Under the pieces are notes generated by a model. It did no database searches and had not been told where the DNA came from. It saw nothing but the letters and a program-made list of their open reading frames with translations. From the NCBI RefSeq assembly GCF_006345805.1, contig NC_043003.1, positions 88,598,001 through 88,662,000 on the forward strand: a stretch of DNA of 64,000 nt, in the 5' to 3' direction. Shown here piece by piece: positions 3,336 through 64,000 of this stretch. The position numbers and the translations under genes were made by a program. How positions within the stretch are numbered: position 1 is the stretch's first letter; the number at the start of each line of letters is the position of its first letter. The DNA comes from Octopus sinensis. Lineage: Eukaryota.

Positions 3336-4745
3336 CTACTCTGGAGCAGTGGAAAACTGCCAGTGTCATTCCTCTGTTCAAAAAGGGCGACCGCACATCA
3401 CCTGTCAACTATCGCCCAGTCAGTCTCACTAGCTGTATTGCAAAACTGATGGAATCGTGTGTCAGAGAAACACTCTGGAACTTCTGGAGCTCTCACAGTC
3501 TCATCCGACCCTCACAATAGGGATTTGTCCCTAACTCCAGCTGCAGTGATCAGCTTGTCGAGTTCCTTGAGGACATTACTCAGATCACTGACAGTGGCTC
3601 ATGGGTAGATGTTGTCTACCTTGACTTTGCTAAGGCTTTCAACTCTGTGCCACACAAAAGGCTTATGGTGAAACTCTCTGCAATGGGTGTGAGGGATGAC
3701 CTTTTTAACTGGTTGAAATCCTTCATCCTCAGCCGAAAGGAGGTTGTCACAGTTCTAGGACAGCACTCTACACCATATGAGATGTCATCGGGTGTACCAC
3801 AGGGATCTGTCCTTGGTCCCCTCTTGTTTGTGGCATACATTAATGACATAGATGCCAATTTAAAGAATGCCACAGTATTGAAATATGCAGATGACATCAA
3901 GCTGTACCTTGAAATCAAGAGGACAGATCCTGATGTCTACAACTCTTTCCTGCAATCAGACTTAGACACAATGCAGCAATGGATCACAGACTGGCAACTG
4001 AAACTGGCTGTGGACAAGTGTACCACCATGCATTTTGGGAGAAAAAACCCTGCGTCCACATACTCCCTCCACAACACTGATATCAAGAAATCCTCTTGCA
4101 AGCGTGACCTAGGCATCACTGTCAGCAGTGATTTGCATTGGACAAAGCATATCTCTAAAATTGTCAAGAAGGCCGAGGGTGTCTTGGCATCACTCAGCAA
4201 GACTTTTGTTAGCCACTCTCCAGCCATCTATTTAAAACTGTATACAGCTATGGTACGACCACACTTGGAATTCGCATCATCAGTTTGGAACCCTTATCTT
4301 GCTCAGAACATTGACCTCCTGGAATCTGTCCAGAGACGTGCAACCAAACGCATACCCTCCATCAGATACCTACCATATTCTGAGCGCCTTGTTTCCCTGG
4401 GCATGGATTCACTGAAACTCCGGCGTCTGGCGACGGACTTGGTAAGCACCCACAAAGTTATCAACCACCTCACCAACAACAACACTGAACACCTTTTTGA
4501 TCTTCATGTGTCTAACACACGTGGACATGCCTACAAAGTCAGAAAACAACACAGCTCCCATGACTTTCGGAAACATTTTTTCACGCTCAGAGTTGCTGAA
4601 GCATGGAATAAACTGCCTGCGTCAGTTGTTGACTGCCATGACACTGCATCCTTTAAGGCCCTCATGCTTTCCGAAATCCGCCGAAACTACACCTGATTAT
4701 ATATACACTTTAGATGAGTTGTAGTGCACCTGAGCACTGTACACA

Positions 4746-10140: not shown

Positions 10141-13100
10141 CATCATCATCATCATCATCATCGTTTAACGTCCGCTTTCCATGCTAGCATGGGTTGGACG
10201 GTTCAACTGGGGTCTGGCAAGCCCGAAGGCTGCACCAGGCCAGTCAGATCTGGCAGTGTTTCTACAGCTGGATGCCCTTCCTAACGCCAACCACTCCGAG
10301 AGTGTAGTGGGTGATTTTATGTGCCACCGACATAGGTGCCAGACGAGGCTGGCAGACGGCCACGCTCGGATGGTGTTTTTTATGTGCCACCGACAGAGGT
10401 GCCAGACGGGGCTGGCGGACGGCCACGCTTGGATGGTGTTTGTTACGTGCCCTCAGCACGGAGGCCAGTCGTTGCGGTACTGGCTACGATCACGTTCGGA
10501 TGGTTTTCTTATGTGCCACCGGCACTGGTACCACAAGGATACAAATTCCATTGATGTTCATCTATTTTGATTTGGTTCGATTTGATTTGATTTGATTCGA
10601 TTCGATTCTCACTTGCCTCAACAGGTCTTCACAAGTGTCACAAGAAGGAAGGTATGCACAGGTGGACTGACTACGTCCCAGGTAGGGGCCACGGATTATG
10701 GCTTCACTAGTCTTGCCGGGTCTTCTCAAGCACAGCATACTTCCATAGGTCTCGGTCTCTAGTCATTTCCATGGTGAGACCTAACGTCCGAAGGTCGTGC
10801 TTCACCACTTCGTCCCAGGTTTTCCTGGGTCTACCTCTTCCACGGGTTCCCTCAACTGCTAGGGATTGGCACTTTCTCACACACCTATCTTCATCCATTC
10901 TCGCCACATGACCATACCAGCGCAATCGTCTCTCTTGCACACAACAACTGATGCTTCTTAGGTACAACATTTCTCTCAAGGTGCTAACGCTCTGTCGAGT
11001 AAGTACACTGACATTACACATCCATCGGAGCATACTGGCTTCGTTCCTCACGAGCTTACGCATGTCCTCAGCAGTCACGGCCCATGTTTCACTGCCATGT
11101 AGCATAGCTGTTCGTACACATGCATCATACAGTCTGCCTTTTACTCTGAGCGAGAGGCCTTTAGTCACCAGCAGAGGTAAGAGCTCCCTAAACTTTGCCC
11201 AGGCTATTCTTATTCTAGCAGTTACACTTTCAGCGCACCCGCCCCCACTACTGACTTGGTCACCTAGATAGCGGAAGCTATCAACTACTTCTAGTTTTTC
11301 CCCCCGGAAAGTGACGGAAGTTGTTTTCTGCAGATTTTCGGAGGTCAATGCTCCAGAGCATCTGCCACATACAAAAACTATCTTCCCAGTTAGCCTACCT
11401 TTGACATTGCTGCACCTCTTATGTGTCCATAGCTTACACTGGGTACATCTTATAGAGTTTCTACCTACACCTTTTCTACAGATCGAGCAGGGCCATCTTC
11501 CTGAGGATATTTGTGGATTTTCTAACTTTCTACTTATTAGTACTTTGGTTTTAGCTAGGTTGACTCTAAGGCCCCTCGATTCTAAACCCTCCTTCCACAC
11601 CTGGAACTTCTCCTCCAGTTCTGATAGTGACTCAGCGATTAGAGCGAGGTCGTCAGCATAGAGGAGCTCCCAGGGGCAGCCTGTCTTGAATTCCTCCACA
11701 ATTGCCTGGAGGACTATGATAAATAGGAGGGGGCTGAGTACTGAACCCTGGTGGACCCCAACCTCTACCTTGAATTCTTCTGTGTACATGCTGCCAACTC
11801 TAACCTTACTTACGGCATCTCTGTACATGGCTTGCACAGCCCTCACCAGCCATTCATCTATCCCTAGTTTCTTCATTGACCACCAGATGAGGGATCGGGG
11901 GACCCTATCAAAGGCTTTCTCCATGTCAACGAAAGCCAGGTACAGGGGCTTATCTTTGGCTAGGTATTTCTCCTGCAGCTGCCTTACCAGGAATATAGCA
12001 TCAGTGGTGCTTTTCCCTGGGACAAACCCAAACTGCATCTCATCTAAACTAACTCTCTCTCTAATTAGTTGGGCTATGACCCTCTCCGTAACCTTCATTA
12101 CCTGATCCAACAGCTTGATACCTCTGTAATTATTTGTATCCAGGGCATCGCCTTTACCTTTGTAGCAGTTGACTAGTATGCTGCTACACCAGTCATTGGG
12201 TATGACTCCTTCGTGTATCACCTGGTTGACTATACGGGTGACTAGGTTATAGCCGACACTGCCAGATATTTTGAGCATCTCTGCAGTAATTCCTGATGGG
12301 CCTGGGGCTTTCCCTGTCTTCATGCTTCTAATTGCCTTAGCTACCACGGAACTATCAACTCGGCTAGCTGGTCCCTCTGTTGGGTCAACATTCGGCAGAC
12401 TCTCTTTATCCCATTCATTTTCTTTATTCAGCAACCTTTCATAGTGGCATCTCCAAACCTCTCTCTTTGCATCCTCATTTAGCGCAAGTGAACCATCATC
12501 CATGCGAACACACTTCTCTCCTACCACATCACGATTCTCTCTCACACACTGTCTTGCAACACGGAATACCTCAAGTCTTTCATCCTCACGGCTCAGAACA
12601 TTGGCAAATTTTTTCTTATCCGCTTCCCCTCTGGCTAAATAAACCTGTCTCCTAGCTTCCCTTTTGGCTGTCTGATACAATTCCCTGCTACCACCGTTCT
12701 TCCAGTCCTTCCAAGCCTGTCTCTTTTGTCTAATAGCCCTGTCAACCACATTGTTCCACCACCATGTTACTCTGGGTCGAGATGGTACTTTGCTCCATCC
12801 ACAGATCTGGTCAGTGGCTGTCAGCAGATTGTCCCGTAGGAATCTCCAGTTGTCTTCCACATTAAGTGAAGCTATATCCCCTTCTATTTCGTCAGAGGCT
12901 TCGAGTAGTATGTCTCTAAATCTCTGTCCATTTGCAGGATCTTTAAGCTTCCAGACCCTTCTCCTCCAAGCCGGTCTTCTTCTGGGCAACCATTTAGCTC
13001 TGATCCTGAAGTTGCTAACTACTAATCTATGTTGGGGAGTACATTCTTCGCCTGGGAAGGTTTTGGCATTTATAATCAGCCCTCTTTCCCTTTTTCTGGC

Positions 13101-13503
13101 AAGGATGTAGTCAATCTGGCTGGTGTGTCTGCCAGAACGGTAGGTGACTAGTTGAGAGGTGGGTTTCCTGAAGTGGGTATTGCAGACCATAAGGTCATTT
13201 GCATCGCAGAACTCCAGCAGCCTGGTTCCTTCCTCATTTCGAGAGCCAAAACTGTAGCCTCCATGGACGCCATGGAAGCCCCCGACATGTCATCCAACAT
13301 GTCCATTGAAATCACCTGCCACGAAGAGAAGGTCACTGTCATTTGTCAATGAGGTAGTCCGCAATAGGGTGTCATAGAATTGGTCCTTTTGTCCTTCCGG
13401 TAGCCCTGGTTGAGGGGCATATGCCGAGATGATGGTAGCTGTCCTATGGTGAAGAACTAATCTAATTTTAATTACTCTGTCACTTACTCTGACTACCTTG
13501 CCT
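10141..13503 (-). mobile_element. Near-intact 5'-truncated RTE LINE (partial APE, RT, PHD finger, 3' UTR repeats, (GAT)n tail)
   Basis: ORF 10707-13190 has YRGIKLL, FVDMEKAFDRV, GVHQGSVLSPLLF, LYADD, FRYLG; the APE part upstream is in the same frame, separated by one TGA at 13290-13292; (CAT)n at 10141-10162 on +; possible TSD TATGTAT (10134-10140, 13503-13509). Confidence 0.95.
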
Positions 13504-13761: not shown

Positions 13762-15910
13762 TTGATTTGATTTGATTTGATTTTAGATTTGATTTTTTAG
13801 TTTCAGCTCATGAGCTGTGGCCATGCTGGGGCACCGCCATTTGGTGTTGCTACATGGTTTTACTTCACGAAAGCTTTTTAGCGACTGCCATTTGGTGCAT
13901 GAGAGAGTTCGATGCAGCTGCCATCATCTGCACATCCTGCCGTGAAGTTGGTTCATCTGGGACACCTGACAGGAAGAGATCCAGTTTCATTTTAAAGACA
14001 TCTGCATCCACCCCATGCAGGTCTCTCAGGTTCTTCGGGAGGATATTGAAGAGCTGTGGGCCTCGGAAGCCCAGGCTATCACAGTATCTTGTTCTACATC
14101 TTGATGGCAAATTCGGAGTCCTAGGCACCACGCAGTGGCGCCCAGTTCTGGCATTTGTGTAACTCTCGATGCCAAAGTTTGGGACATGTCCCTCCAGGAT
14201 CTTCCAGATGTATATTATGGCATATCTTTCCCGCCTACGCTCCAAGGAATATAGTTTTAATCTCTTGAGTCTTTCCCAGTAGCTTACATTCTGCATAGAG
14301 GCTATCTTCTTCGTGTAGCTACGTTGGATCGCCTCGAGTTCTGTGATCAACTTGACATTGGATGGTGACCATAACTGAGAGCAATAGTCAAAGTGGCTTA
14401 GGACAAGTGTCCTCCAGAGGACCATCATGGTTTCTTGTTCTCTTGTTCTAAAGGTTCTGAGAATCCATCCGGCCAGTCGTCTACATTTCATTGCCAATTT
14501 AGCAACATGTACACGAAAGGTTGTGTCATTACTCATGTAAATACCCAGGTCACGCACTGATTGTGCCTCTGGGATTGCTATTCCTCCGGGTCCAGTGTAT
14601 TCATTGGGTATTGCATTTAGTTTTGCATGCTGATAGTATAAAGCTTGAAACTTTTCAGCATTGAACTGCATGCTATTCTTTTCAGCCCACTTGTATATTT
14701 TGTCCAGCTCACATTGCAGGCGTTTAGTGTCCTCAGGGTTCTGTATTGCCTGTGAAACTTTTGTATCATCTGCATAACTTGTGATCGTGGCTCTCTGCGT
14801 GGCTGAGGGCATGTCTGAGAGGGCCATTATGAACAGTAGTGGTCCCAAAACAGTGCCCTGCGGAACACCGCTCACTATTTGCGTGTTAATGGAAGTGGCT
14901 ACTACCACCTGACTTCTATCTTTCAGAAAGTCATAAACCATTCTCCCAGTTTTCCAACTATGTTGAGATCACGCAGTTTGTGACATATCATTCCATGATC
15001 GACTTTATCAAAGGCCTTTGCAAAGTCGAGATATATCACTTCCACATTTGAGTGGTTGAGCAGCCGTTTCAGCACCCAGTCATAGTGTTGTAGGAGCTGA
15101 GTTAAACAGCTTCTCCCTGGTCGGAAACCATGTTGGGTGTCGGGCAGCAAGTCATTTTCTTCAAGGAAGGTGATCAGTTTCCTTCTGACTATTCGTTCCA
15201 TGACCTTGCTGATGTGTGAGGTCAGAGAGATAGGTCTGTAGTTCTTTGCCTCCGCTCTGCTACCTCCTTTATGAATGGTGCATATTTTTCCTTCCTTCAG
15301 TTGTCTTGGAAGTTTGCCAGCTGCAAGGAAGCTCTGAAAGAGGAACTGCAGTGGTCTTGCTAGGACTCTCTTACAGGAGGATTGCCGGGAATCTATCGGG
15401 GCCAGTAGCTGAGTCTGTTTTCATTTCATCTATAGCCTTTATTACATCGTCTTCCTTTATATCGATGTAATCTATCGTCGCCGCCTCTGATTTTATATCT
15501 GCAGTGGTAAAAAAAGTCAGTTGGATTGGTGATTTGGAGATGCCCAAGGGGTGGAGTGAAAACACTCTTGAATTGCTCATTCAGTATTTCACTTACCCTC
15601 ATTGGTTTTCCTGTAAGTGTGCCATCCTTTTCAAGGAGTGGCCCTATCCTACAGTGCGCCGTAGCTGTTTCTTTGGCATACCTGTAGAAAGCTCTGGGGT
15701 TAGATTTTATGTTGTCTATAGCCCAGGCTTCTTTGTCTGCTCTTTCCTTTTCATGGGAGAGTTGCAGACATTTTTCAATTTGCAACAGTTTTATTCTCAG
15801 GCGGGACTTTTCACTGCTTTCAATCTGTTTGTTTAGGCGATTTGAAATTTTTGTACGCCGTCTCATTAAAATTTTCCTCTCTCTGGGGATTTTGTTCTTG
15901 TGTACAGTGG
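13762..15910 (-). mobile_element. 5'-truncated CR1-group LINE, second family, frameshifted
   Basis: QHGFRPGRSCLTQL, YLDFAKAFDKVDH, GVPQGTVLGPLLF, YADD, VRDLGI, VPDEP; 3' stem-loop and (ATCAA)n tail at 13762-13800. Confidence 0.92.
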
Positions 15911-18300: not shown

Positions 18301-18366
18301 TGACGTCAATCTGCTACTAACTGAATCAACCAATCAGAAAACGAAGCCGAGCAGGAGTCGTCATTT
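18301..18366 (+). promoter_or_regulatory. Candidate promoter of the hnRNP-like gene: CRE, CCAAT box, Inr-like
   Basis: TGACGTCA 18301-18308; AACCAATCAG with CCAAT at 18330-18334; TCATTT (TCAKTY) 18361-18366; about 220-280 nt upstream of the ATG. Confidence 0.55.
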
Positions 18367-18580
18367 CTGTTTCTCAGATATTGCTTCACTTAGTCTTGTT
18401 TATGTTTTGTCAAGAGATTTATTGTAAAAACAAGGCTTTATTTCATTGAAAATTCATTGAAAAATACTATTTTCTTGATATATAATCTTTCCGTTTGTGT
18501 AATCCCGAAGAAATATGTCCGTATAGAAATTGGAAATTACTGTTGGAAAATATTTTTAAAAGGAAAAATAAGAAAAGAAA

Positions 18581-19570
18581 ATGGCAGATCGCAGGTTTGT
18601 AGCGATGGACGATCGAGATTATTGCAAACTGTTCGTTGGACGTTTAAATCGAGATATCAATGAAAAACATCTGAAATCTTATTTTGAAAATTGGGGAGAA
18701 GTGGCCGAAGCTCGAATTGTTAGAGACTCATACGGTTTCGTAACTTTCCGATATCCACAACATCTGGACGACTGTCAAGGCGCGCGGCCTCACTCCATCG
18801 GCGAGCAACAAATAATCACGCGAAGGGTTAATTCTCGGGACAAAAACACAGCTGAAGTGTACAAGTTGTTTATCAAGGGCGTCAGCGAGGATACAACAGA
18901 GACAGACATCAAGCAATCATTTTCACCGTATGGTATTATTAAGGATATAGAAATGCCGAAGGATCTACGAACTGGACAACAGAAGGACTTCTGCTTCGTT
19001 ACTTTTGATGATTATGACAGCGTTGATAAGTGTGTGATCCAGCAAACATTCTCCGTGGCCGGCCGCGACGTATGGGTGCAGAAAGATAGAAAACAGGATT
19101 TACAGGGTCGCAGTGTAACATATCGAAAAGGTGGGTATGAAGACGGTTATTCAAACTCGTCTAATTACCGCCGTGACCAGGGTTGGCACAACGGTGGAAT
19201 TAGTAATGGTGGTAATAATAATAATTATAATGGTGGTGGTCACAACAGTTCGAATTACAGTGGTGACTCGGCTTGGAGAAATGGCAATAGTTACTCGCGT
19301 AGCAACTATCGACGCGAGAACAACTGGAACGGTCGGTCGAGTTACCATCAGAGGGATGACGGCTTCACTAATCGCCTCAACTTCAACCGTGACCCGAACT
19401 GGAGTAATAGTCACACCTCAAGTTATCACGACCAGCAAAGGTCGGGTGGTCACACCAACACCAATTACCACCGGGAACGAAGCTTGGGTCGTGTTAGCTC
19501 CAGTTATGGCAATAATAAAGACCAGACACGTTCTTCTAAGAGAAACTACGATAAACAGGGCCGCAACTGA
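18581..19570 (+). CDS. Intronless divergent hnRNP A1/A2/Hrb-family RNA-binding protein, 329 aa (2 RRMs and low-complexity tail), probable retrogene
   Basis: RRM1 KLFVGRL...YGFVTF...ARPHSI; RRM2 KLFIKGVSEDT...FCFVTFDDYDSVDKCVIQ aligns with hnRNP A1 KIFVGGIKEDT...FAFVTFDDHDSVDKIVIQ; single uninterrupted ORF. Confidence 0.9.
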   Translation: MADRRFVAMDDRDYCKLFVGRLNRDINEKHLKSYFENWGEVAEARIVRDSYGFVTFRYPQHLDDCQGARPHSIGEQQIITRRVNSRDKNTAEVYKLFIKGVSEDTTETDIKQSFSPYGIIKDIEMPKDLRTGQQKDFCFVTFDDYDSVDKCVIQQTFSVAGRDVWVQKDRKQDLQGRSVTYRKGGYEDGYSNSSNYRRDQGWHNGGISNGGNNNNYNGGGHNSSNYSGDSAWRNGNSYSRSNYRRENNWNGRSSYHQRDDGFTNRLNFNRDPNWSNSHTSSYHDQQRSGGHTNTNYHRERSLGRVSSSYGNNKDQTRSSKRNYDKQGRN

Positions 19571-20030
19571 AAATGGCAGGAATGAGGTCCAAACATGATG
19601 TAGAGAGGGGCCAGGTTCTATATTTTCTAGTTCCTCACCTACATTGGATCTAAAAGAAAAAAAAAAAAAAAATAGGGAGACAAAAGAAGAAATTTGAAAA
19701 CAGGAAAAAAAAAAATTCAAAAATATTTGAAAGATGTAGAAGAAAAGAAAAATATAACTTTGGATGTTTTTTGTAATTAATTAACTGTATCGAATAACTT
19801 TTTTTTTTCAAATTTAATTTGTATTGTTTTTTTTCGTTTCTTAGAAATTTTGATCTGAATTTTTAAACTGTGACTCACATGGGTTATTAAAATATTACCT
19901 GTGTTGACGCTGATGTGTATTCTACATGTATATATTATAGGATATATATATATATATATATATTCTATATATTATAGTAGTATTAAGTTTTTATGTAATA
20001 TTTTTCATATATATCTATTGAATATTGTAG

Positions 20031-37885: not shown

Positions 37886-39728
37886 TTTCATCATCATCAT
37901 AATTGTTTAATGTCCATTTTCCTTGCTAGCGTGGGTTGGGTGGTTCCACTGGGGTTTGAGAAGCCAAGAGGCTGCACCAAGCTCCAGTCTGATCTGGCAG
38001 TGTTTCTACAGCTGGATGCCCTTCCTAATGCCAACCACTCCGTGATTGTAGTGGGCGCCTTTTACGTGCCAGCGGAGGCCACAAACGGTTGGTGCTTTTT
38101 ACATGCCACCAGCATGGAAGCCCGTCAAGGCAGCACTGGCATCGGCCATGTTCGGATGGTGCTTTTTACGAGCCACTAGCACGAGTATCACAACTACAAT
38201 TTCCATTTGATTTTTATTTTGATATTGATGTACTTGACTCAATAGGTCTCCTCAAGCACAGCAGGTTGCCCTACAACCCAAGGTAAGCACAGCAGGCCGT
38301 CCTGCAATCCAAGGTACTTTGGATGGGTCGGGGCTGCTATGTGAAGCTGGTGCAGGAAACAGTCATGAACTCACATTTTTTGTCAGGTCTTCGCAGTCAC
38401 AGCATATCTCCAGAGGTCTCAGTCTTTCGTCATTGCCTCTGTGAGGCCCAACGTTCGAAGGTCATGCTTGACCACCTCATCTCATGTTTTCCTGGGTCTA
38501 CCTCTACCCTGGATTCCTTCAACTGTTTGGGAGTGGCACTTCTTCACACCTCTCCTCATCCATCCGTAGTACATGACCATACCAGCACAAACGTCTCTCT
38601 TGCACGCTACATCCAATGCTTCTTATGTTCAGCATTTCTCTCAGGGCGCTTACACTCTGTCCTGTGGTCACACTGACAATACACTTCCAATGGATCATGC
38701 TAGCTTCATTTCTTTCAGGCCTATGCTTGTCCTCTGCAGTCATGGTTCATCTTTCACTGCCATGAAGCATGGCAGTTCACACACGTGTCGTACAATCTAC
38801 CTTTCACTCTGAGCAAGAGACCCTTTGTCACCAGTAGGGGTAGAAGCTTTCTAAACTTTGTGCAGGCTATTCTTATTCTAGAGGTGACACTCCCTGAGCA
38901 TCCACCTCCACTACTAACTTGGTCACCTAGGTAGCGGAAACTATCAACTACTTCTAGTTTCTCCCCCTGGAGTGTGATGGAATCTGTTTTCTGAGTATCT
39001 GTGGTGTCTATTGCCCCTGTTCATCTGCTGCACAAGAAAGCTATCTTCTTGGTTAGTTTTTCTTTGATGTTGCTGCACCTCTTATGCATCCATAGCTTAC
39101 ACTGGGTACATCTTATGGAGTTTCTACCTACACCTTTTCTACAGATCGAGCAGGACCACCTACCTGAGGGGATGTGTGATGAGTTCACCTTCCTACTTAC
39201 TATAACTTTGGTCTTTGCTATATTGACTCTAAGGCATTTTGATTCTAAACTTTGCTTCCACACCTGAAATTTCTTTTCTAGTTCCGGTAGTGATTCTGCT
39301 ATGAGGGCCAGGTCATCAGCATAGAGGAGCTCCCAGGGGCAACCTATCTTGAATTTCTCTGTTATTGCCTGGAGTACTATGATGAATTCTTCACTATACT
39401 CATTGCCAATCCTAACCTTACTAATAGCCTCTCTGTATAGGGCCTGTACAGCCCTTATTAACCATTTGTCAATCTCCAGTTTCCGCATCGCCCACCAGAT
39501 AAGGGATCAGGGAACCCTGCCAAAGGCTTTCTCCAAATCCACAAAAGCTAAGTATAGGGGTTTATCTTTAGCTAAGTATTTCTCCTGCAGTTGTCGAACC
39601 AGGAATATGGCATCAGTGGTGCTTCTACCTGGCACAAAACCGAACTGCATCTCATCTAAGCAGACTCTCTCCCTGATGAGATGGGCTATGACCCTCTCCG
39701 TGACCTTCATCACCTGATCTAGCAGTTC
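37886..39728 (-). mobile_element. Degraded, internally deleted RTE LINE
   Basis: (CAT)n tail; MMKVTERVIA...FVDLEKAFGRVP; PWELLYADDL; PHD segment CSICRKGVGRNSIRCTQCKLWMHKRC. Confidence 0.9.
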
Positions 39729-54774: not shown

Positions 54775-57700
54775 ATCATCATCATCATCATCGTTTAACG
54801 TCCGCTTTCCATGCTAGCATGGGTTGGACGGTTCAACTGGGGTCTGGCAAGCCCGAAGGCTGCACCAGGCCAGTCAGATCTGGCAGTGTTTCTACAGCTG
54901 GATGTCCTTCCTAACGCCAACCACTCTGTGAGCGTAGTGGGTGCTTTTTACATGCCACCGACACAGGTGCCAGACGAGGCTGGCGAACGGCCACGCTCGG
55001 ATGGTGTTTTTTACGTGCCACCAGCACGGAGGCCAGTTGATGTGGTACTGGCTACGGCCACGTTCGGATGGTTTTCTTATGTGCCACCGGCACTGGTACC
55101 AAAAAACTACAAATTTCATTGATGTTCATCGATTTTGATTTGATTCTTTGATTTTTGATTTTCACTTGCCTCAACAGGTCTTCACAAGTAGAGTTATGTG
55201 TCCCAAGAAGGAAGGCATGCACAGGTGGACTGACTACATCCCAGGTAGGGGCTATGGGTTATGGCCTCACTTGTCCTGCCGGGTCTTCTCGTGCACAGCA
55301 TACTTCCAAAGGTCTCGGTCTCTGGTCATTTCCTCGGTGAGACCTAAAGAGCGAAGGTCGTTCTTCACCACCTCGTCCCAGGTTTTCCTGGGCCTACCTC
55401 TTCCACAGGTTCCCTCAACCGCTAGGGTGTGGCACTTTTTCAGACAACTATCTTCATCCATTCTTACTACGTGTCCATACCAGCGTAGACGCCTCTCTTG
55501 CATACCACATCTGATGCTTCTTAGGTTCAACTTTTCTCTTAAGGCACTTACACTCTGTTGGGTTTGAACACTGACATTACACATCCATCGGAGCAAACTG
55601 GCTTCATTTCTTGCGAGCTTACGCATATCCTCAGCAGTCACGGCTCATGTTTCACTGCCATGTAGCATGGCTGTTCGCACACATGCGTCATACAGTCTGC
55701 CTTTTACTCTGAGTGAGAGGCCTTTTGTCCCTAGCAGAGGTAAGAGCTCTCTGAACTTTGCCCAGGCTATTCTTACTCTAGCAGTTACACTTTCGGCACA
55801 CCCATCCCCGCTACTGACTTGGTCACCTAGGTAACGGAAACTATCAACTATTTCAAGTTTTTCTCCCTGGAATGTGGCGGAAGATGGTCTCAGAGCATTT
55901 TCAGTGTTTATTGTTCCTGAGCATCTGCCACATACAAAAACTATATTCCTAGTTAGCCTTCCTTTGACATTGCTGCACCTCTTATGTGTCCATAGCTTAC
56001 ACTTGGTGCATCTTATAGAGTTCCTACCTACGTCTTTTCTACAGATCGAGCAGGGCCATCTACCTGAAGGCGTTTGAGATTTGTCTACCTTCCTACTTAT
56101 TAGGACTTTGGTTTTCGCTAGATTGACTCTAAGGCTCTTCGATTCTAATCCTTGCTTCCACGCCTGAAACTTGTCCTTGAGTTCTGATAGTGATTCAGCA
56201 ATTAGAGCAAGGACATCAGCATAGAGGAGCTCCCAGAGGCATCCTGTCTTGAATTCTTCCGTTATTTCCTGGAGGACTATGATAAATAGGAGGGGGCTGA
56301 GGACTGAGCCTTGGTGGACCCCAACCTCCACCCGGAATTCTTTAGTGTACTCGTTGCCAACCCTCACCTTACTAACAGCGTCCCTGTACATGGCATGCAC
56401 AGCTCTCACTAAGCATTCATCTATCCCTAGTTTCTTCATTGACCACCAGATAAGGGAACGGGGGACCCTGTCAAAGGCTTTCTCCAACTCAACGAAAGCC
56501 AGGTACAGAGTTTTATCTTTGGCTAGGTATTTCTCCTGCAGCTGTCTCACCAGAAATATGGCATCAGTGGTGCTTTTCCCTGGCACGAAACCAAACTGCA
56601 TCTCGTCTAGGTTGACTCTCTCTCTAATCAGTTGGGCTATGACCCTTTCCGTAACCTTCATTACCTGATCCAACAGCTTGATACCTCTGTAATTATTTGT
56701 ATCTAGGGCGTCACCTTTACCTGTGTAGCAGTTGACTATTATGCTACTACACCAGTCATTGGGTATGACTCCTTCGTGTATCACCTGGTTAACTATACGG
56801 GTGACTAGGCTATAGTCGACACTGCCAGATATTTTGAGCATCTCTGTAGTAATTCCTAATGGGCCTGGGACTTTCCCTGTCTTCATGCTTCCAATTGCCT
56901 TAACTACCATGGAACTGTCAACTCGGATAGCTGGTCCCTCTGTTGAGTCGACATTCGGCAGACTCTTTTTATCCCATTCATTCTCTTTGTTGAGCAATCT
57001 TTCATAGTGGCATCTCCAAACCTCTCTCTTTGCATCCTCATTTAGCACAAGTGAACCATCATCCATGCGAACACATTTCTCTCCTACCACATCACGATTC
57101 TCTCTCACACACTGTCTTGCAACACGAAACACCTCAAGTCTTTGGTCCTCACGGCGCAGAACATTGGCAAATTTTTTCTTATCTGCTTCCCCTCTAGCTA
57201 AATATACCTGTCTCCTAGCTTCTCTTTCCGCAGTCTGATACAATTCCCTACTACCGCCTTTCCTCCAGTCCTTCCAAGCCTGTCTCTTGTCTCTAATAGC
57301 CCTGTCTACAACATTATTCCGCCACCACGTTACCCTGGGATGAGATGGGACTTTGCTCCATCCACAGATCTGGTCAGTGGCTCTCAGCAGATTGTCCTGT
57401 AGAAACCTCCAGTTGGCTTCCACATTATGTGATGTTATATCGCCTTCTATTTCGTCGAAAGCTTCGAGTAGAACTTCTCTAAATCTCCGTCCATTTACAG
57501 GATCTTTAAGTTTCCAGACTCTTCTCCTCTGAGCTGGTCTTCTGGGCAGCCATTTGGCCCTGATCCTGAAGTCGCTAACTACTAATCTATGTTGAGGAGT
57601 ACATTCCTCGCCTGGGAAGGTTTTGGCATTTATAAGCAGCCCTCTTTCTGGCGAGGATGTAGTCGATCAGGCTAGTGTGTCTGCCAGAACGGTAGGTGAC

Positions 57701-60477: not shown

Positions 60478-61770
60478 CGAGGGGCATTCAATAAGTAATG
60501 CCCCTGACCCACTTGCCGTTGTTTGATCTAGCTGAAATTTTGCGTGTGCAATTATTTATATCTCTATAGAGTAGGTGGCAAATTACAGCTCTGAACTAAT
60601 TGGGGTTTCTGATTTACAGGTGTTTGAACTGAGTCAAGTGTGAAATGGAGCCTGTTGAGTGTCGAGCAGTGATCTGGTTTTTGTATTTGAAAGGACGCAC
60701 ACCACGGGAGACTTTTGATGAAATGAAAGTAACTTATGGTAATGATGCCCCATCATATGACCTTGTAAAACGCTGGCATCGTGAATTCAAACATGGTCGG
60801 AACTCGGTGGAAACAGCTCCTAGATCTGGTCGCCCCCCCCTTCTGCAATTGATGAGGCATCTGTCTGTCAAGTTGAGGCTGCCATTTTGGAAGATCGACG
60901 CATAACTATTCGCCAAATAGCCCATGAGGTCAAGATTAGTACCGGGTCTGTGGAAACTATCATTCATGACCATTTGCATATGCAAAAGGTGTCTGCCAGA
61001 TGGATTCCCAGGTTGCTCACACCTTTCCAGAAGCAAGAACGCTTCGAGTGCTCGAGGATAAATTTGGAGATGTACCAAGAAGATGAGTCAAAATTTTGCA
61101 AAAGACTGATTACACAGGATGAAACCTGGGTCCATCACTATGATCCAGAGACCAAAGCCCAGTCAATGCAGTGGAAGCACCGTGACTCACCTCCTCCAAA
61201 GAAGGCAAGGGTGCAGCCCTCCGCTGGCAAGGTCATGCTCGCAGTCTTCTGGGACCAGGACGGAGTATTGATAACAGATTTCCTGGCAAAGGGTACCACA
61301 ATTACAGGAGCCTATTATGCTTCACTTTTGAAGAAATTAAGAGAAACTATCAAAATCAAGAGGCGGGGCAAGATCAGCAAAGGCATCCTCCTCCTGCAGG
61401 ACAACGCTCCGGTCCACAACTCGCTTGTCGCTAGATCAGAAGCACAGGCATGCGGCTATGAACTCCTCCCTCATCCCCCTACTCTCCTGACCTTGCACCC
61501 TCTGATTTTCACCTCTTCCCAACCATGAAGTTGTTTTTGAAAGGAAAGCGTTTCCCAGATGATGCAGCCTTGATTTCTGAAGTCACGTCGTGGTTGGAGG
61601 ACCAAGCTGGGTCTTCTAAAAAAACGGTCTCCAGAGCTGTATCAAATATTGGGAGAAATACGTAACTCTGGGTGGTTCCTATGTAAAGAAAGACTAATAA
61701 CTGTGCAAAGTTTCGTTGCTCTACTGCTATGGGAAGTGGGTCAGGGGCATTACTTATTGAACGCCCCTCG
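60478..61770 (+). mobile_element. Full-length mariner (DD34D) transposon, 1293 bp, TA TSD, frameshifted transposase
   Basis: TA|CGAGGGGCATTCAATAAGTAATGCCCCTGACCCACTT ... AAGTGGGTCAGGGGCATTACTTATTGAACGCCCCTCG|TA; ITQDETW, LQDNAP, HPPYSPDLAPSD (34-residue spacing); frameshifts near 60833-60840, 61480 and 61620. Confidence 0.97.
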
Positions 61771-62104: not shown

Positions 62105-64000
62105 GCCAACTTGCAAAGTCAATGTAGACCAAGTCGTAGCGTATGCGAAAGAAACGGCTTCAGTACACAAGATAGGACCCCTCCTCCAAAAGGATGGCTC
62201 CCTCACAGACAGTCCAACTAAGATCAGTGAGATACTGAATGACCAGTTCAAAAGTGTCTTTACCACCCTGTTGGAACACAGACAAGTGAACGAACCAGTG
62301 GACTTCTTTGCTGCCTCACCTATAACCAGCGAGGCAGTTACAATGGAATACATTGACTTTAGCAAAGAAGATATACAACTAGCCATAGATGAAGTGGACA
62401 CAAACTCAACTGCTGGTCCTGATGGTTTCCCAGCAATCCTCCTCAAAGCATGTAAGCATGCCCTGGCAAAACCCCCAAGATTCTCTTCCAGAGCTTTCTT
62501 GCGAATGGCAAACTGCCAAGCAAGCTGAAGGAGGGAATAATATGCCCCATACATAAAGGGGGAAGTAGAGCAGATGCCAAAAACTATAGGCCTATCTCTC
62601 TGACTTCACACATCAGCAAAGTCATGGAACGGATAGTCAGAGGGAAACTAATCACATTCCTTGAGGAAAATAACTTGCTGAGTGATACCCAGCATGGTTT
62701 TGGACCAGGTAGGAGCTGCCTGACCCAGCTCTTACAACATTATGACTGGGTGTTGAGGCAGTTACTCAACAAATCGAATGTGGACGTAATCTACCTTGAT
62801 TTTGCAAAAGCTTTTGACAAAGTGGATCATGGTATGATATGCCACAAACTGCGTGACTTCGGCATGGCTGGAAAACTTGGAGTGTGGTTACATGACTTCC
62901 TGAAAGATAGGAGTCAGGCAGTAGTGGTTAATGGAGCCACCTCTATGAACACAGAAATAGTGAGCGGTGTTCCACAGGGCACTGTCTTAGGACCACTGCT
63001 TTTTATAGTGGCCCTCTCAGATATGCCCTCAAATGCCCGGGTAGCCACTCTGGAAAGCTATGCAGACAATACGAAAGTCTTGCAGAAAATACAGAACCCC
63101 AGCGATGTTGCACACCTGCAGCAAGAGTTGGACTCAATGTACAGATGGGCTGAGGATAATAATATGCAGTTTAATGCTGAAAAATTCCAGGCCCTGCACT
63201 ACCAGCATCCAAATCTGAATATGAAACTTACAGGGTACACCGGTCCACAGGAAATTTTAATCCCAGAGCCTAAGTCAGTGAGGGACCTGGGTATTGACAT
63301 GAGTGATGATACCTCTTTCCAAGTGCATATTACCAGGATGGCGACAAAGTGCAGATGATTGGCTGGATGGATCCTAAGAACAGTCAGAAGCAGAGATAAG
63401 GAAACCATGATGGTCCTCTGGCAGACATTTGTCCTCAGCCGCCTGGATTACTGCTCACAGCTATGGTCACCCACCAGTGTGAAATTAACAGCGGACCTTG
63501 AAGCAATCCAGAGAAGATTCACAAAGAAGATCGTCTCTTTGCAACAGCTGAACTACTGGGAAAGATTGAAACAGCTAAGACTCTACTCCCTGGAGAGAAG
63601 ACGGGAGAGGTATGCAGTAATGTATATCTGGAAGATCCTGGGAGGAATTGTGCCAAATTTTGGCATTCTAAGCTACACCAATGCTAGAACAAGACGACAC
63701 TGCATAGTGCCAAAGATCCCAGCAATGCCATCACGTTTCAGGACCAGCTACTGCAACAGCCTGGGTTTCAAGAGCCCACAGCTTTTTAATAGTCTCCCAA
63801 AGAGTCTGAGGAACTTGCACAAAGTAGATGTAGCGGTTTCTAAATCAAAGCTGGACATCTTCCTGTCGAGAGTCCCAGATGAACCTACCTCACAGCAAGA
63901 AGTGTAAATAAGGGTAGTTATATCAAACTCCATTCTTCACCAAGTGCCACATATTAGAGGAGGTTCTTAGTAATAATAGTGTAGCACTAAACGGCGGTGC
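62105..64000 (+). mobile_element. 5'-truncated CR1-group LINE, same family as 13762-15910
   Basis: RT ORF 62624-63358, in-frame TGA, then 63359-63907 ending VPDEP; the window ends inside the GGCGGTGC tail. Confidence 0.93.

What the first reader, a model, noticed from the sequence alone, without database searches (positions are those of the whole stretch)
18581..19570. Intact, intronless, fast-diverged hnRNP A1/Hrb paralogue with remodelled RNA-binding motifs
Seen: one open 329-aa frame with two RRMs and no introns, in a window where the TE ORFs are broken; an A-rich tract (19652-19672) lies about 80 nt after the stop. The RNP motifs depart from the very conserved family consensus: the RRM1 beta2-beta3 loop is shortened (RDSYGFVTF vs RDPNTKRSRGFGFVTY), RNP2 is LFVGRL/LFIKGV, and RRM2 RNP1 is KDFCFVTF vs RGFAFVTF, while the A1-diagnostic FDDxDSVDK.VIQ is kept. 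Established: hnRNP A/B proteins control splicing and bind nascent RNA, and retrocopies of RNA-binding genes often become germline-expressed. Inference: a lineage-specific retrogene with altered RNA specificity, notable in a clade with very extensive A-to-I RNA editing.
Basis: partly seen in the sequence, partly recalled or inferred. Interest (0 to 1): 0.75.

Follow-up and report, generated by a model that had tools for sequence, protein, structure and literature searches.

The report
Divergent intronless octopus hnRNP A paralogue
This is a real, conserved, single-exon octopus gene for a strongly modified relative of the RNA-binding protein hnRNP A1, one of at least four intronless copies of that gene family in octopuses; it is an unstudied variant of a well-known kind of gene, not a new kind of system.

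Summary
Window 18581-19570 (+) is one open 329-aa frame with two RRMs, most similar to hnRNP A1/A2B1. The window is Octopus (100% identical to GCA_006345805.1, CM016865.1). The gene is syntenic in O. bimaculoides and present in a third octopod. dN/dS is 0.08-0.16 and all indels are in frame, so it is a functional gene.

An intronless CDS is not special to this gene. Paralogue groups B and D and a second divergent family ('para-2', 12.3 Mb away on the same chromosome) are also single-ORF. Only the tandem groups A and C have introns. A retroposed origin is therefore well supported. Whether this gene had its own retroposition event or copied an earlier intronless gene is unresolved. The A-rich tract lies inside a conserved 3' block and no target-site duplications were found.

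Some 'remodelled' motifs are normal for cephalopods (Cys in RNP1, Cys before RNP2). Unique changes are a 7-residue loss in the RRM1 beta2-beta3 loop, three RNP glycines replaced by R, K and D, and a Gly-poor N/S/R/Y tail with no RGG or PY motif. All stacking aromatics and inter-RRM salt-bridge residues are kept, and the model matches UP1. Germline expression, altered specificity and any link to RNA editing are untested.

The parts
18581..19570 (+). Complete single-exon CDS, 329 aa plus stop, of the divergent hnRNP A paralogue
   Evidence: ORF list. The identical protein is encoded in GCA_006345805.1 and GCA_951406725.2. Orthologues exist in O. bimaculoides and a third octopod, with dN/dS 0.08-0.16 and in-frame indels only.
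18626..18826 (+). RRM1 (residues 16-82)
   Evidence: Pfam RRM_1. AlphaFold2 model with pLDDT >90 and beta-alpha-beta-beta-alpha-beta topology. F18, Y51 and F53 occupy the RNP aromatic positions.
18722..18733 (+). Shortened beta2-beta3 hairpin of RRM1 (R48-D49-S50-Y51). Seven residues are missing relative to the family, including the basic first residue of RNP1.
   Evidence: HMMER alignment to UP1. In 371 tandem-RRM domains the A1 R47-F57 stretch is 11 residues in 334 and 4 residues only in this gene's three orthologues. The missing residues span the exon junction NTKR|SRGFGF of intron-bearing group A; group C's junction maps to the same loop region.
18863..19084 (+). RRM2 (residues 95-168), including LFIKGV (RNP2), KDFCFVTF (RNP1) and FDDYDSVDKCVIQ
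   Evidence: Pfam RRM_1 best stretch 96-152. pLDDT >90. F97, F137 and F139 are retained, as are D144 and D146 (the salt-bridge partners of R69 and R82).
19097..19567 (+). C-terminal low-complexity domain (residues 173-329). It is N/S/R/Y-rich with 13% Gly and has no RGG, RG or PY motif. It is predicted to be disordered.
   Evidence: Composition and motif counts against the canonical tails. pLDDT <50. No nonsynonymous change between O. sinensis and O. bimaculoides; dS 0.10 against 0.29 in the RRM half.
18365..18580 (+). Probable 5' untranslated leader (216 nt), colinear with the genome, so no 5'UTR intron
   Evidence: The O. bimaculoides Logan contig L004 starts exactly here, in unique sequence, where cross-species conservation begins. 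Identity is 86% between O. sinensis and sp3, against 80% upstream.
19571..19882 (+). Conserved 3' flank, probably the 3'UTR. It contains the A-rich tract 19652-19672 and a second A11 run at 19705-19715. ATTAAA follows at 19886-19891.
   Evidence: Alignment of three species. Identity is 97.4% before the A tract and 89.9% after it. L004 runs through the tract to 19808. Poly(A)-signal and A-run offsets.
18301..18334 (+). Candidate promoter motifs: TGACGTCA (18301-18308) and CCAAT (18330-18334), 57-64 and 31-35 nt upstream of the putative transcript start
   Evidence: Sequence. Both are kept in O. vulgaris and O. bimaculoides, but the segment is deleted or rearranged in the third species. This is weak evidence.

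Best explanation
The ORF is a functional single-exon Octopus gene for a highly divergent member of the hnRNP A family. It is already auto-annotated: the O. bimaculoides orthologue XP_014782589.1 is named 'heterogeneous nuclear ribonucleoprotein A1(-like)'.

Origin. Octopods have an intron-bearing tandem pair (paralogue groups A and C). They also have at least four dispersed copies with an uninterrupted coding region: groups B and D, a second divergent family (para-2), and this gene. The gene therefore descends from a processed (retroposed) mRNA copy. It arose either by its own retroposition or by DNA duplication of an earlier intronless copy, possibly the ancestor it may share with para-2 on the same chromosome. 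A long stem branch was followed by strong purifying selection.

Mechanism (inferred). The protein keeps the UP1 architecture: two RRMs held by the R-D salt bridges, with all six stacking aromatic residues. It most likely still binds single-stranded RNA on the two beta-sheet faces. The RNA-contacting rim is altered. RRM1 has lost 7 loop residues, including the RNP1 basic residue. Three conserved glycines next to the RNP aromatics are now R21, K99 and D136. The tail is a Gly-poor N/S/R/Y low-complexity domain without RGG boxes or a PY-type nuclear import motif.

I infer a specialised hnRNP A variant whose RNA preference or affinity, partners and probably localisation differ from the canonical proteins.
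For: Real and conserved gene:
- Identical ORF in two assemblies, and syntenic in O. bimaculoides.
- dN/dS 0.14, 0.11 and 0.08; every indel is a multiple of 3.

Probably transcribed as one unspliced unit:
- L004 is 100% identical to the O. bimaculoides genome. It begins in unique sequence 216 nt before the ATG, and a second mRNA-sized contig comes from the same run.

Family membership:
- Pfam 2x RRM_1; UP1 best by sequence and by fold (TM 0.88, rmsd 1.5 A over 164 columns).
- Aromatic and salt-bridge residues retained.
- Nested among the cephalopod paralogues in NJ trees.

Processed origin:
- Group A has at least 9 coding exons, with junctions at aa 56/57, 96/97 and ~165 inside the RRM region. 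Group C next to it is also split.
- The query lies on a different chromosome from A, B and C.
- Single-ORF paralogues: B, D, para-2.

Link to para-2:
- NJ bootstrap 72-88%.
- Five near-exclusive shared residues.
- 7 of 14 co-varying sites share the same derived state, against 0-30% (about 19% pooled) in eight controls.

Unique changes and tail.
Against: - No tissue expression, RNA-binding or localisation data could be obtained. The functional consequences are inferred from sequence alone.
- That L004 derives from RNA rests on its contig boundaries, not on run metadata.
- The retroposition hallmarks are absent or ambiguous. There are no target-site duplications, and the A tract is internal to a conserved block.
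- The grouping with para-2 could be long-branch attraction. Group profiles for A, E and B score the query higher (140-144 bits) than the para-2 profile does (115 bits). The query also shares 'K[RD]FCFVTF' and 'CVIQ' with groups B and E.
- Absence outside Octopus is based on protein collections, not on tBLASTn of other cephalopod genomes.
- The inter-RRM arrangement comes from an AlphaFold2 prediction guided by family alignments.
Confidence: 0.7

Rival explanations
1. One reading: a separate, Octopus-lineage retroposition of a canonical hnRNP A mRNA (A-, B- or E-like), followed by a burst of divergence. The resemblance to para-2 would then be long-branch attraction or convergence.
For: - The query keeps canonical features that para-2 has lost: CKLF, GF.FVTF/FCFVTF, K-D in the RRM2 loop, and an N/W/Y/G-containing tail (14 such sites; tail).
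- Group profiles A, E and B score higher than the para-2 profile.
- No orthologue was found outside Octopus, whereas para-2 orthologues are found in Argonauta and in more distant taxa.
- The loop deletion spans an exon junction of the intron-bearing genes, as an aberrantly spliced template would produce.
Against: - The canonical features it retains are ancestral states and say nothing about sister relationships.
- NJ bootstrap for query + group B is only 6%.
- There are 0-2 residues shared uniquely with any canonical group, against 5 with para-2.
- No poly(A) end or target-site duplications mark a discrete insertion.
Confidence: 0.35
2. The RRMs have lost ordinary RNA binding, and the protein acts mainly through its low-complexity tail, for example as a condensate scaffold or a decoy for hnRNP A partners.
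For: - The changes sit next to the stacking aromatics: Gly to R21, K99 and D136, loss of the RNP1 arginine of RRM1, and S50 in place of Gly.
- The tail is the most conserved part of the gene, with no amino-acid change between O. sinensis and O. bimaculoides.
Against: - All six aromatic positions and the inter-domain salt-bridge residues are retained.
- The RRM region itself is under strong constraint (omega 0.04-0.18).
- The model superposes on nucleic-acid-bound UP1 structures.
Confidence: 0.15
3. A decaying or neutrally evolving retrocopy whose frame is open by chance.
For: It sits in TE-rich, AT-rich DNA with no neighbouring annotated gene within 10 kb.
Against: - dN/dS is 0.08-0.16 over a dS of up to 0.2.
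- Five indels are all in frame, and the start and stop are conserved.
- The conserved UTR-like flanks exceed neutral identity.
- A probable transcript contig exists.
Confidence: 0.02
4. The gene is functionally tied to coleoid A-to-I editing, either as a regulator of editing or as a heavily edited transcript.
For: The only evidence is indirect. The tail-coding half plus the proximal 3'UTR folds unusually stably (z = -3.72). It also has reduced synonymous and non-coding divergence, as reported around coleoid editing sites (my own recollection of the literature, not checked here).
Against: - No editing data were examined.
- There is no covariation.
- The stable folding may simply reflect repetitive GGT/ACC-rich codons.
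- Nothing links the protein itself to ADAR.
Confidence: 0.05

Closest known systems
Vertebrate hnRNP A1 / A2B1 (UP1 two-RRM unit)
   Same: Two RRMs with a UP1-like predicted fold (TM 0.88). The RNP aromatic residues are retained, as are the equivalents of R75/R88 and D155/D157, ARPH, and FDDxDSVDK.VIQ. There is a disordered low-complexity tail.
   Different: - About 35% identity.
- The RRM1 beta2-beta3 loop is 7 residues shorter and lacks the equivalent of R55.
- G20R, G110K and G147D.
- The tail has 13% Gly, against 40% in the vertebrate A1 sequence compared here (rabbit); no RGG and no PY (M9-type) motif.
- Single exon.
Octopod hnRNP A groups A and C (P0220/P0072 and P0082): the intron-bearing tandem genes
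   Same: Same family and same lineage signatures (CKLF, GFCFVT). The group A tail is also N- and W-rich.
   Different: The canonical genes have at least 9 coding exons, normal loop length, consensus glycines, and RGG and PY motifs. They lie on a different chromosome and are about 42% identical in the RRM region.
Octopod groups B and D (P0261, P0291): canonical-looking paralogues with an intronless CDS
   Same: Single uninterrupted ORF. Group B shares K at RNP1 position 1, a non-Gly at position 2, and 'FCFVTFDD.D.VDKCVIQ'.
   Different: B and D keep the full loop, the RNP glycines and a Gly-rich RGG/PY tail, and they have short branches.
para-2 family (P0333 O. sinensis 'hnRNPs A2/B1-like', P0335 Argonauta, P0008, P0119)
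   Same: Intronless, long branch, non-Gly tail, same chromosome (12.3 Mb away), omega 0.12-0.14. It shares the rare residues R24, V47, R81 and K88-N89. It is the query's NJ sister at 72-88% bootstrap.
   Different: para-2 keeps the full-length loop, has F[SLV]F[LV] RNP1 variants and a P/Y/S/L-rich tail, and is found beyond Octopus. It is only ~41% identical to the query.
Mammalian RNA-binding-protein retrogenes such as RBMXL2 (hnRNP G-T), PABPC3 and CSTF2T
   Same: An intronless copy of a multi-exon RNA-binding-protein gene, kept under selection as a specialised paralogue (PMC6345566, PMC12151635 and PMC3482194, from abstracts returned).
   Different: Those genes are shown to be testis-expressed and functionally required, or have been tested. 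No expression pattern or phenotype is known here, and divergence from the parent is much greater.

Membership tests
hnRNP A/B (A-type, UP1-like 2xRRM) family | Two tandem RRM domains at the N-terminus | tested here: met
   Pfam RRM_1, two stretches, E 1.2e-28. Both are modelled with pLDDT >90.
hnRNP A/B (A-type, UP1-like 2xRRM) family | Closest by sequence and fold to UP1 rather than to other 2xRRM families (hnRNP D, Hrp1, Musashi, TDP-43) | tested here: met
   A1 and A2B1 at E ~1e-28, against Hrp1 at 1e-19 and hnRNP DL at 2e-19. The top 36 Foldseek hits are all UP1 or A2B1.
hnRNP A/B (A-type, UP1-like 2xRRM) family | RNP-1 and RNP-2 stacking aromatics (A1 F17, F57, F59, F108, F148, F150) and inter-RRM salt bridges (R75-D155, R88-D157) | tested here: met
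   The query has F18, Y51, F53, F97, F137 and F139, plus R69, R82, D144 and D146. The role of these residues is from established UP1 structural work (my own knowledge).
hnRNP A/B (A-type, UP1-like 2xRRM) family | Consensus glycines and basic residue of RNP-1/RNP-2, and the standard beta2-beta3 loop | tested here: not met
   G20R, G110K and G147D; R55 deleted; the loop stretch is 4 residues against 11. Each state occurs in fewer than 2% of 371 family domains.
hnRNP A/B (A-type, UP1-like 2xRRM) family | Glycine-rich C-terminal domain with RGG box and M9/PY nuclear localisation signal | tested here: not met
   The tail has 13% Gly against 33-49% in the canonical tails, and 0 RGG, 0 RG and 0 PY. 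Similarity to the canonical tails disappears after composition adjustment. This was tested at sequence level only.
hnRNP A/B (A-type, UP1-like 2xRRM) family | Phylogenetic nesting within the family | tested here: met
   NJ trees place it inside the cephalopod hnRNP A radiation, away from the Hrb27C-like and squid-like outgroups. This is a distance method only.
Processed retrogene | Intronless coding region where family members carry introns | tested here: met
   Single ORF. Group A has at least 8 introns, three of them within the RRM region, and group C is split at the same loop.
Processed retrogene | Location unlinked to the intron-bearing parent | tested here: met
   The query is on OX597820.1 / CM016865.1. 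Groups A, B and C are on OX597819.1 or on a 120.5 Mb O. sinensis chromosome.
Processed retrogene | Poly(A) remnant at the 3' end of the copied unit | tested here: inconclusive
   An A16 tract exists, but conservation and the L004 contig continue beyond it.
Processed retrogene | Flanking target-site duplications | tested here: not met
   Only AT-rich or chance-level direct repeats were found. This is expected for an old insertion, so it weighs little.
Processed retrogene | An identifiable intron-bearing parent as the closest relative | tested here: inconclusive
   The closest relatives in the trees (para-2, then B/E) are themselves intronless or of unknown structure. The intronless state may be inherited from them.
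Functional protein-coding gene (not a pseudogene) | Purifying selection and frame conservation across species | tested here: met
   omega 0.08-0.16; five in-frame indels.
Functional protein-coding gene (not a pseudogene) | Transcription | tested here: inconclusive
   The mRNA-sized contig L004 has ends in unique sequence. The run's library type could not be verified.

The most novel reading that the evidence does not exclude
Octopods have diversified the hnRNP A family by repeated retroposition into at least four intronless paralogues. Two of these (this gene and para-2) have replaced the glycine-rich, RGG/PY-bearing tail and altered the RNA-binding rim. This gene would then be an Octopus-restricted RNA-binding protein with new sequence preference that is not imported by the M9/transportin route. 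It would act in a tissue-restricted RNP granule (neuronal or germline), and its own mRNA would carry a conserved structured element in the tail-coding and 3'UTR region.
Probability: 0.2. Interest if true: 0.6.

Novelty: new variant of a known kind. Interest (0 to 1): 0.35.

Why it matters
hnRNP A proteins are central regulators of splicing, RNA transport and RNA granules, and their RRM surfaces and Gly-rich tails are among the most conserved features of animal RNA-binding proteins. This gene is a naturally selected variant. It keeps the UP1 scaffold but has a truncated RRM1 loop, charged residues in place of the RNP glycines, and a tail without RGG or PY motifs. That makes it a useful comparison for working out what those elements contribute.

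The wider observation bears on how cephalopods expanded their RNA-regulatory toolkit: an intron-bearing A-C pair plus at least four dispersed intronless copies in octopods. However, retrogene paralogues of RNA-binding proteins are a well-known phenomenon. The gene is already auto-annotated in RefSeq, and nothing found here ties it to RNA editing or to the germline.

Tried and rejected
- Target-site duplications around the transcript unit: only AT-rich or chance-level repeats. These include an 11-mer at both the start and stop codons and a 33-nt pair at 73% identity.
- A-tract as the retrocopy end: rejected, because conservation and the L004 contig continue past it.
- Identifying the source species or library type of the Logan and ENA runs (SRR11869384-94, SRR32601320, SRR9969973, ERZ21867824) from the literature: no hits.
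- Literature on this gene by accession, or on cephalopod hnRNP retrogenes: nothing. An O. maya paper only uses HNRNPD as a qPCR reference.
- Conserved RNA structure in the tail and 3'UTR: stable fold, but 0 compensatory pairs with three near-identical sequences and no Rfam family.
- Overlapping gene in the alternative frame over the tail: the frame is open in all three species, but 6.5% of synonymous-codon shuffles do as well. Not supported.
- Group-profile scoring to pick the parent: it does not discriminate (A 144, E 144, B 140, para-2 115 bits), because para-2 is itself divergent.
- Gene structures of group E (P0299) and of O. sinensis group A (P0220): not on record. Group A structure was taken from Argonauta instead.
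- Pseudogene reading: rejected on dN/dS and the in-frame indels.
Full report
OBSERVATION

Window 18581-19570 (+) is a single ATG-to-TGA frame of 329 aa. Pfam finds two RRM_1 domains (E 1.2e-28). The best solved-structure relatives are hnRNP A2/B1 and hnRNP A1 UP1 (E ~1e-28), well ahead of Hrp1, hnRNP DL, PABP and TDP-43. The alignments show a 7-residue gap in the beta2-beta3 loop of RRM1. The A-rich tract (AAAAG + A16, 19652-19672) and all the quoted motifs are present. The other large ORFs in the window are reverse-transcriptase (+PHD) and mariner-type transposase fragments.

SOURCE AND ORTHOLOGUES

The exact protein is encoded on two chromosome-scale Octopus assemblies. The window is 100% identical to GCA_006345805.1 CM016865.1 and 98.5% identical to GCA_951406725.2 OX597820.1.

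Its 90%-identity cluster holds two further members:
- O. bimaculoides XP_014782589.1, named 'heterogeneous nuclear ribonucleoprotein A1(-like)'.
- A 332-aa version from five Logan runs of an unidentified third octopod ('sp3').

The O. bimaculoides locus is syntenic over about 13 kb of flank. Nei-Gojobori dN/dS is 0.14 (O. sinensis vs O. bimaculoides), 0.11 (O. sinensis vs sp3) and 0.08 (O. bimaculoides vs sp3), with dS up to 0.20. All five indels are multiples of three. This is a gene under strong purifying selection. It is not a decaying retrocopy, and it is not fast-evolving at present.

TRANSCRIPT UNIT

The O. bimaculoides Logan contig L004 (1453 nt) is 100% identical to that genome. It starts in unique sequence at the equivalent of window 18365, exactly where cross-species conservation begins, and runs colinearly to 19808. 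The same run gave a similarly mRNA-sized contig for another intronless paralogue, L017. I take this as probable, unverified evidence for an unspliced transcript with a 216-nt leader.

The A-rich tract is internal to this unit. Identity between O. sinensis and sp3 is 97.4% in the 81 nt before the tract and 89.9% in the 210 nt after it, against 80% upstream of 18365. The tract is therefore not a convincing retrocopy poly(A) end. No target-site duplications were found.

FAMILY CONTEXT

A word-index search of 5.8 billion clusters, and an exhaustive HMMER search of 1.84 billion representatives, found nothing between ~46% and 90% identity. As far as these collections show, the gene is confined to Octopus.

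Searches seeded with the Argonauta relative P0072 and with P0008 revealed the octopod hnRNP A repertoire:
- Groups A (P0220/P0072) and C (P0082) are adjacent in Argonauta and multi-exon. Group A has at least 9 coding exons, with junctions at aa 56/57, 96/97 and ~165 inside the RRM region. Group C is split at the same RRM1 loop.
- Group B (P0261, O. vulgaris) is one uninterrupted ORF.
- Group D (P0291, O. bimaculoides) is one uninterrupted ORF.
- A second divergent family, 'para-2', is also single-ORF. Its members are P0333 (O. sinensis), P0335 (Argonauta), and P0334, P0008 and P0119 (unidentified sources).

P0333 lies on the same chromosome as the query, 12.3 Mb away, inside a PDE gene on the other strand. 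para-2 is old and constrained: dS between Octopus and Argonauta is ~1.5 and omega is 0.12-0.14. Groups A, B and C are on another chromosome.

So the family shows repeated generation of intronless copies. That strongly supports a processed-mRNA origin for the lineage leading to the query. It also removes the claim that intronlessness is peculiar to this gene.

WHERE THE QUERY ATTACHES

NJ trees on 171-173 RRM columns place the query inside the cephalopod radiation as sister to para-2. Bootstrap support is 88% with two para-2 sequences and 72-76% with five. That pair sits next to groups B+E.

Evidence for the para-2 link:
- Five query residues are shared with at least 4 of 5 para-2 sequences and at most 1 of 25 canonical sequences. 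Any single canonical group shares 0-2 such residues.
- Of 14 sites where both lineages depart from the cephalopod consensus, 7 carry the same derived residue. Eight control lineages give 0-30%, about 19% pooled.

Evidence against it:
- Both branches are long, and several of the shared states are conservative.
- Group profiles for A, E and B score the query higher than the para-2 profile does.
- The query shares 'K[RD]FCFVTF' and 'CVIQ' with groups B and E.

I regard a shared intronless ancestor with para-2 as somewhat more likely than an independent retroposition, but the question is unresolved.

WHAT IS AND IS NOT REMODELLED

Cys in RNP1 of RRM2 (FCFVT) is present in all cephalopod groups A-E and in 83 of 371 surveyed family domains. 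'CKLF' occurs in groups A-C. K at RNP1 position 1 occurs in groups B and E. These features are not remodelling.

Changes that are unique or rare:
- The stretch from A1 R47 to F57 is 4 residues in the query, against 11 in 334 of 371 domains. It is the shortest seen, and the deletion removes the equivalent of R55.
- G20R occurs in 7 of 371 domains, G110K in 6 of 371 and G147D in 5 of 371.

The deleted residues span the exon junction NTKR|SRGFGF of the intron-bearing genes. This may be coincidence, or it may be a trace of an aberrantly spliced template.

Retained features are all six stacking aromatics (F18, Y51, F53, F97, F137, F139) and the salt-bridge residues (R69, R82, D144, D146).

An AlphaFold2 model from a 48-sequence alignment gives both RRMs pLDDT >90, a tight two-residue beta2-beta3 hairpin and a disordered tail. 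The model superposes on UP1 with TM 0.88 and rmsd 1.5 A over 164 columns, and the top 36 hits are all A1 or A2B1.

THE TAIL

Residues 173-329 are N 18%, S 16%, G 13%, R 12% and Y 8%, with net charge +10. There is no RGG, RG or PY motif. The canonical octopod tails have 33-49% Gly and 2-5 RGG motifs, and most have a PY motif. Similarity to the canonical tails is compositional only.

The tail is nonetheless the most conserved part of the gene. It has no amino-acid change between O. sinensis and O. bimaculoides, and its dS is 0.10 against 0.29 for the RRM half (Fisher p 0.009 and 0.025).

The tail-coding half plus the proximal 3'UTR also folds unusually stably (z = -3.72, with 0 of 100 shuffles as stable), whereas the RRM half does not (z = +2.23). 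Three sequences give no covariation power. Rfam has no match. An overlapping alternative-frame ORF is not significantly supported. This remains unexplained.

MECHANISM (INFERRED)

The conserved UP1 scaffold and aromatic platform argue that the protein still binds single-stranded nucleic acid on its two beta-sheets. The charged replacements at the RNP glycines and the truncated RRM1 loop lie at the rim that contacts the backbone and flanking bases in UP1 complexes (established structural knowledge). Altered affinity or sequence preference is therefore plausible but untested.

Loss of the RGG boxes and of the PY motif predicts loss of arginine-methylation sites and of transportin-type import. 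The Tyr/Asn/Ser-rich tail remains of the kind that drives self-association.

The best reading is a specialised hnRNP A variant maintained by selection. Germline expression is only an analogy to mammalian RNA-binding-protein retrogenes (PMC6345566, PMC3482194). A link to A-to-I editing has no direct support.

VERDICT

This is a new variant of a known kind: a divergent, retroposition-derived hnRNP A paralogue, already auto-annotated but unstudied. Interest is moderate-low at 0.35. The most interesting by-product is the series of intronless hnRNP A paralogues in octopods, together with the conserved, structured tail and 3'UTR block.

Noticed in passing
L013 10001-10930 (GCA_006345805.1 CM016865.1 100956482-100957411); L014; L011 9404-10333; L012: A second divergent hnRNP A-like family with an intronless CDS ('para-2': P0333, P0335, P0334, P0008, P0119). 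It has a P/Y/S-rich tail and is conserved from Octopus to Argonauta and beyond (omega 0.12-0.14). The O. sinensis copy lies inside a GAF+PDEase gene on the opposite strand, 12.3 Mb from the query.
   Followed up: partly
L015 10001-10855 (O. vulgaris OX597819.1); L016 6001-7011 (O. bimaculoides CM046620.1): The canonical-looking hnRNP A paralogue groups B and D, which have Gly-rich RGG/PY tails, also have uninterrupted coding regions. Only the tandem groups A and C (Argonauta L010) are multi-exon. This implies repeated retroposition in this family in octopods.
   Followed up: partly
window 19106-19651: The tail-coding half and the first 80 nt after the stop are the most conserved DNA at the locus (96.8-97.4% between O. 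sinensis and sp3; dS 0.10 against 0.29). They also fold far more stably than shuffles (z = -3.72). No covariation power, no Rfam hit, and the alternative-frame ORF is not significant.
   Followed up: partly
window 18722-18733, compared with L010 14073/15907: The 7-residue deletion in the query's RRM1 loop spans the exon junction (NTKR|SRGFGF) of the intron-bearing group A gene; group C's junction maps to the same loop region.
   Followed up: no
window 18577-18587 and 19569-19579: The 11-mer GAAAATGGCAG overlaps both the start codon and the stop codon. At the stop codon sp3 keeps only the last 10 nt. Its frequency is about chance level for a region of this size.
   Followed up: no
window 18301-18334 and 18515-18526: A palindromic TGACGTCA and a CCAAT box lie 57-64 and 31-35 nt upstream of the putative transcript start. 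Both are kept in O. bimaculoides but lost in sp3. A 3-codon upstream ORF (ATG TCC GTA TAG) is conserved in all three species.
   Followed up: no
window 3647-4696, 10707-13190, 13865-14941, 39021-39488, 55645-57423, 62624-63358; 60887-61528: Several reverse-transcriptase ORFs, some with a PHD finger and the longest 827 aa, belong to related non-LTR-type elements (88% nucleotide identity between the copies at ~10 kb and ~55-58 kb). There is also a mariner-type transposase fragment.
   Followed up: partly
L003 ~11255 onward: The O. bimaculoides assembly has an N-gap starting about 17 nt after the 3' end of contig L004, so the 3' end of the gene cannot be compared in that species.
   Followed up: no
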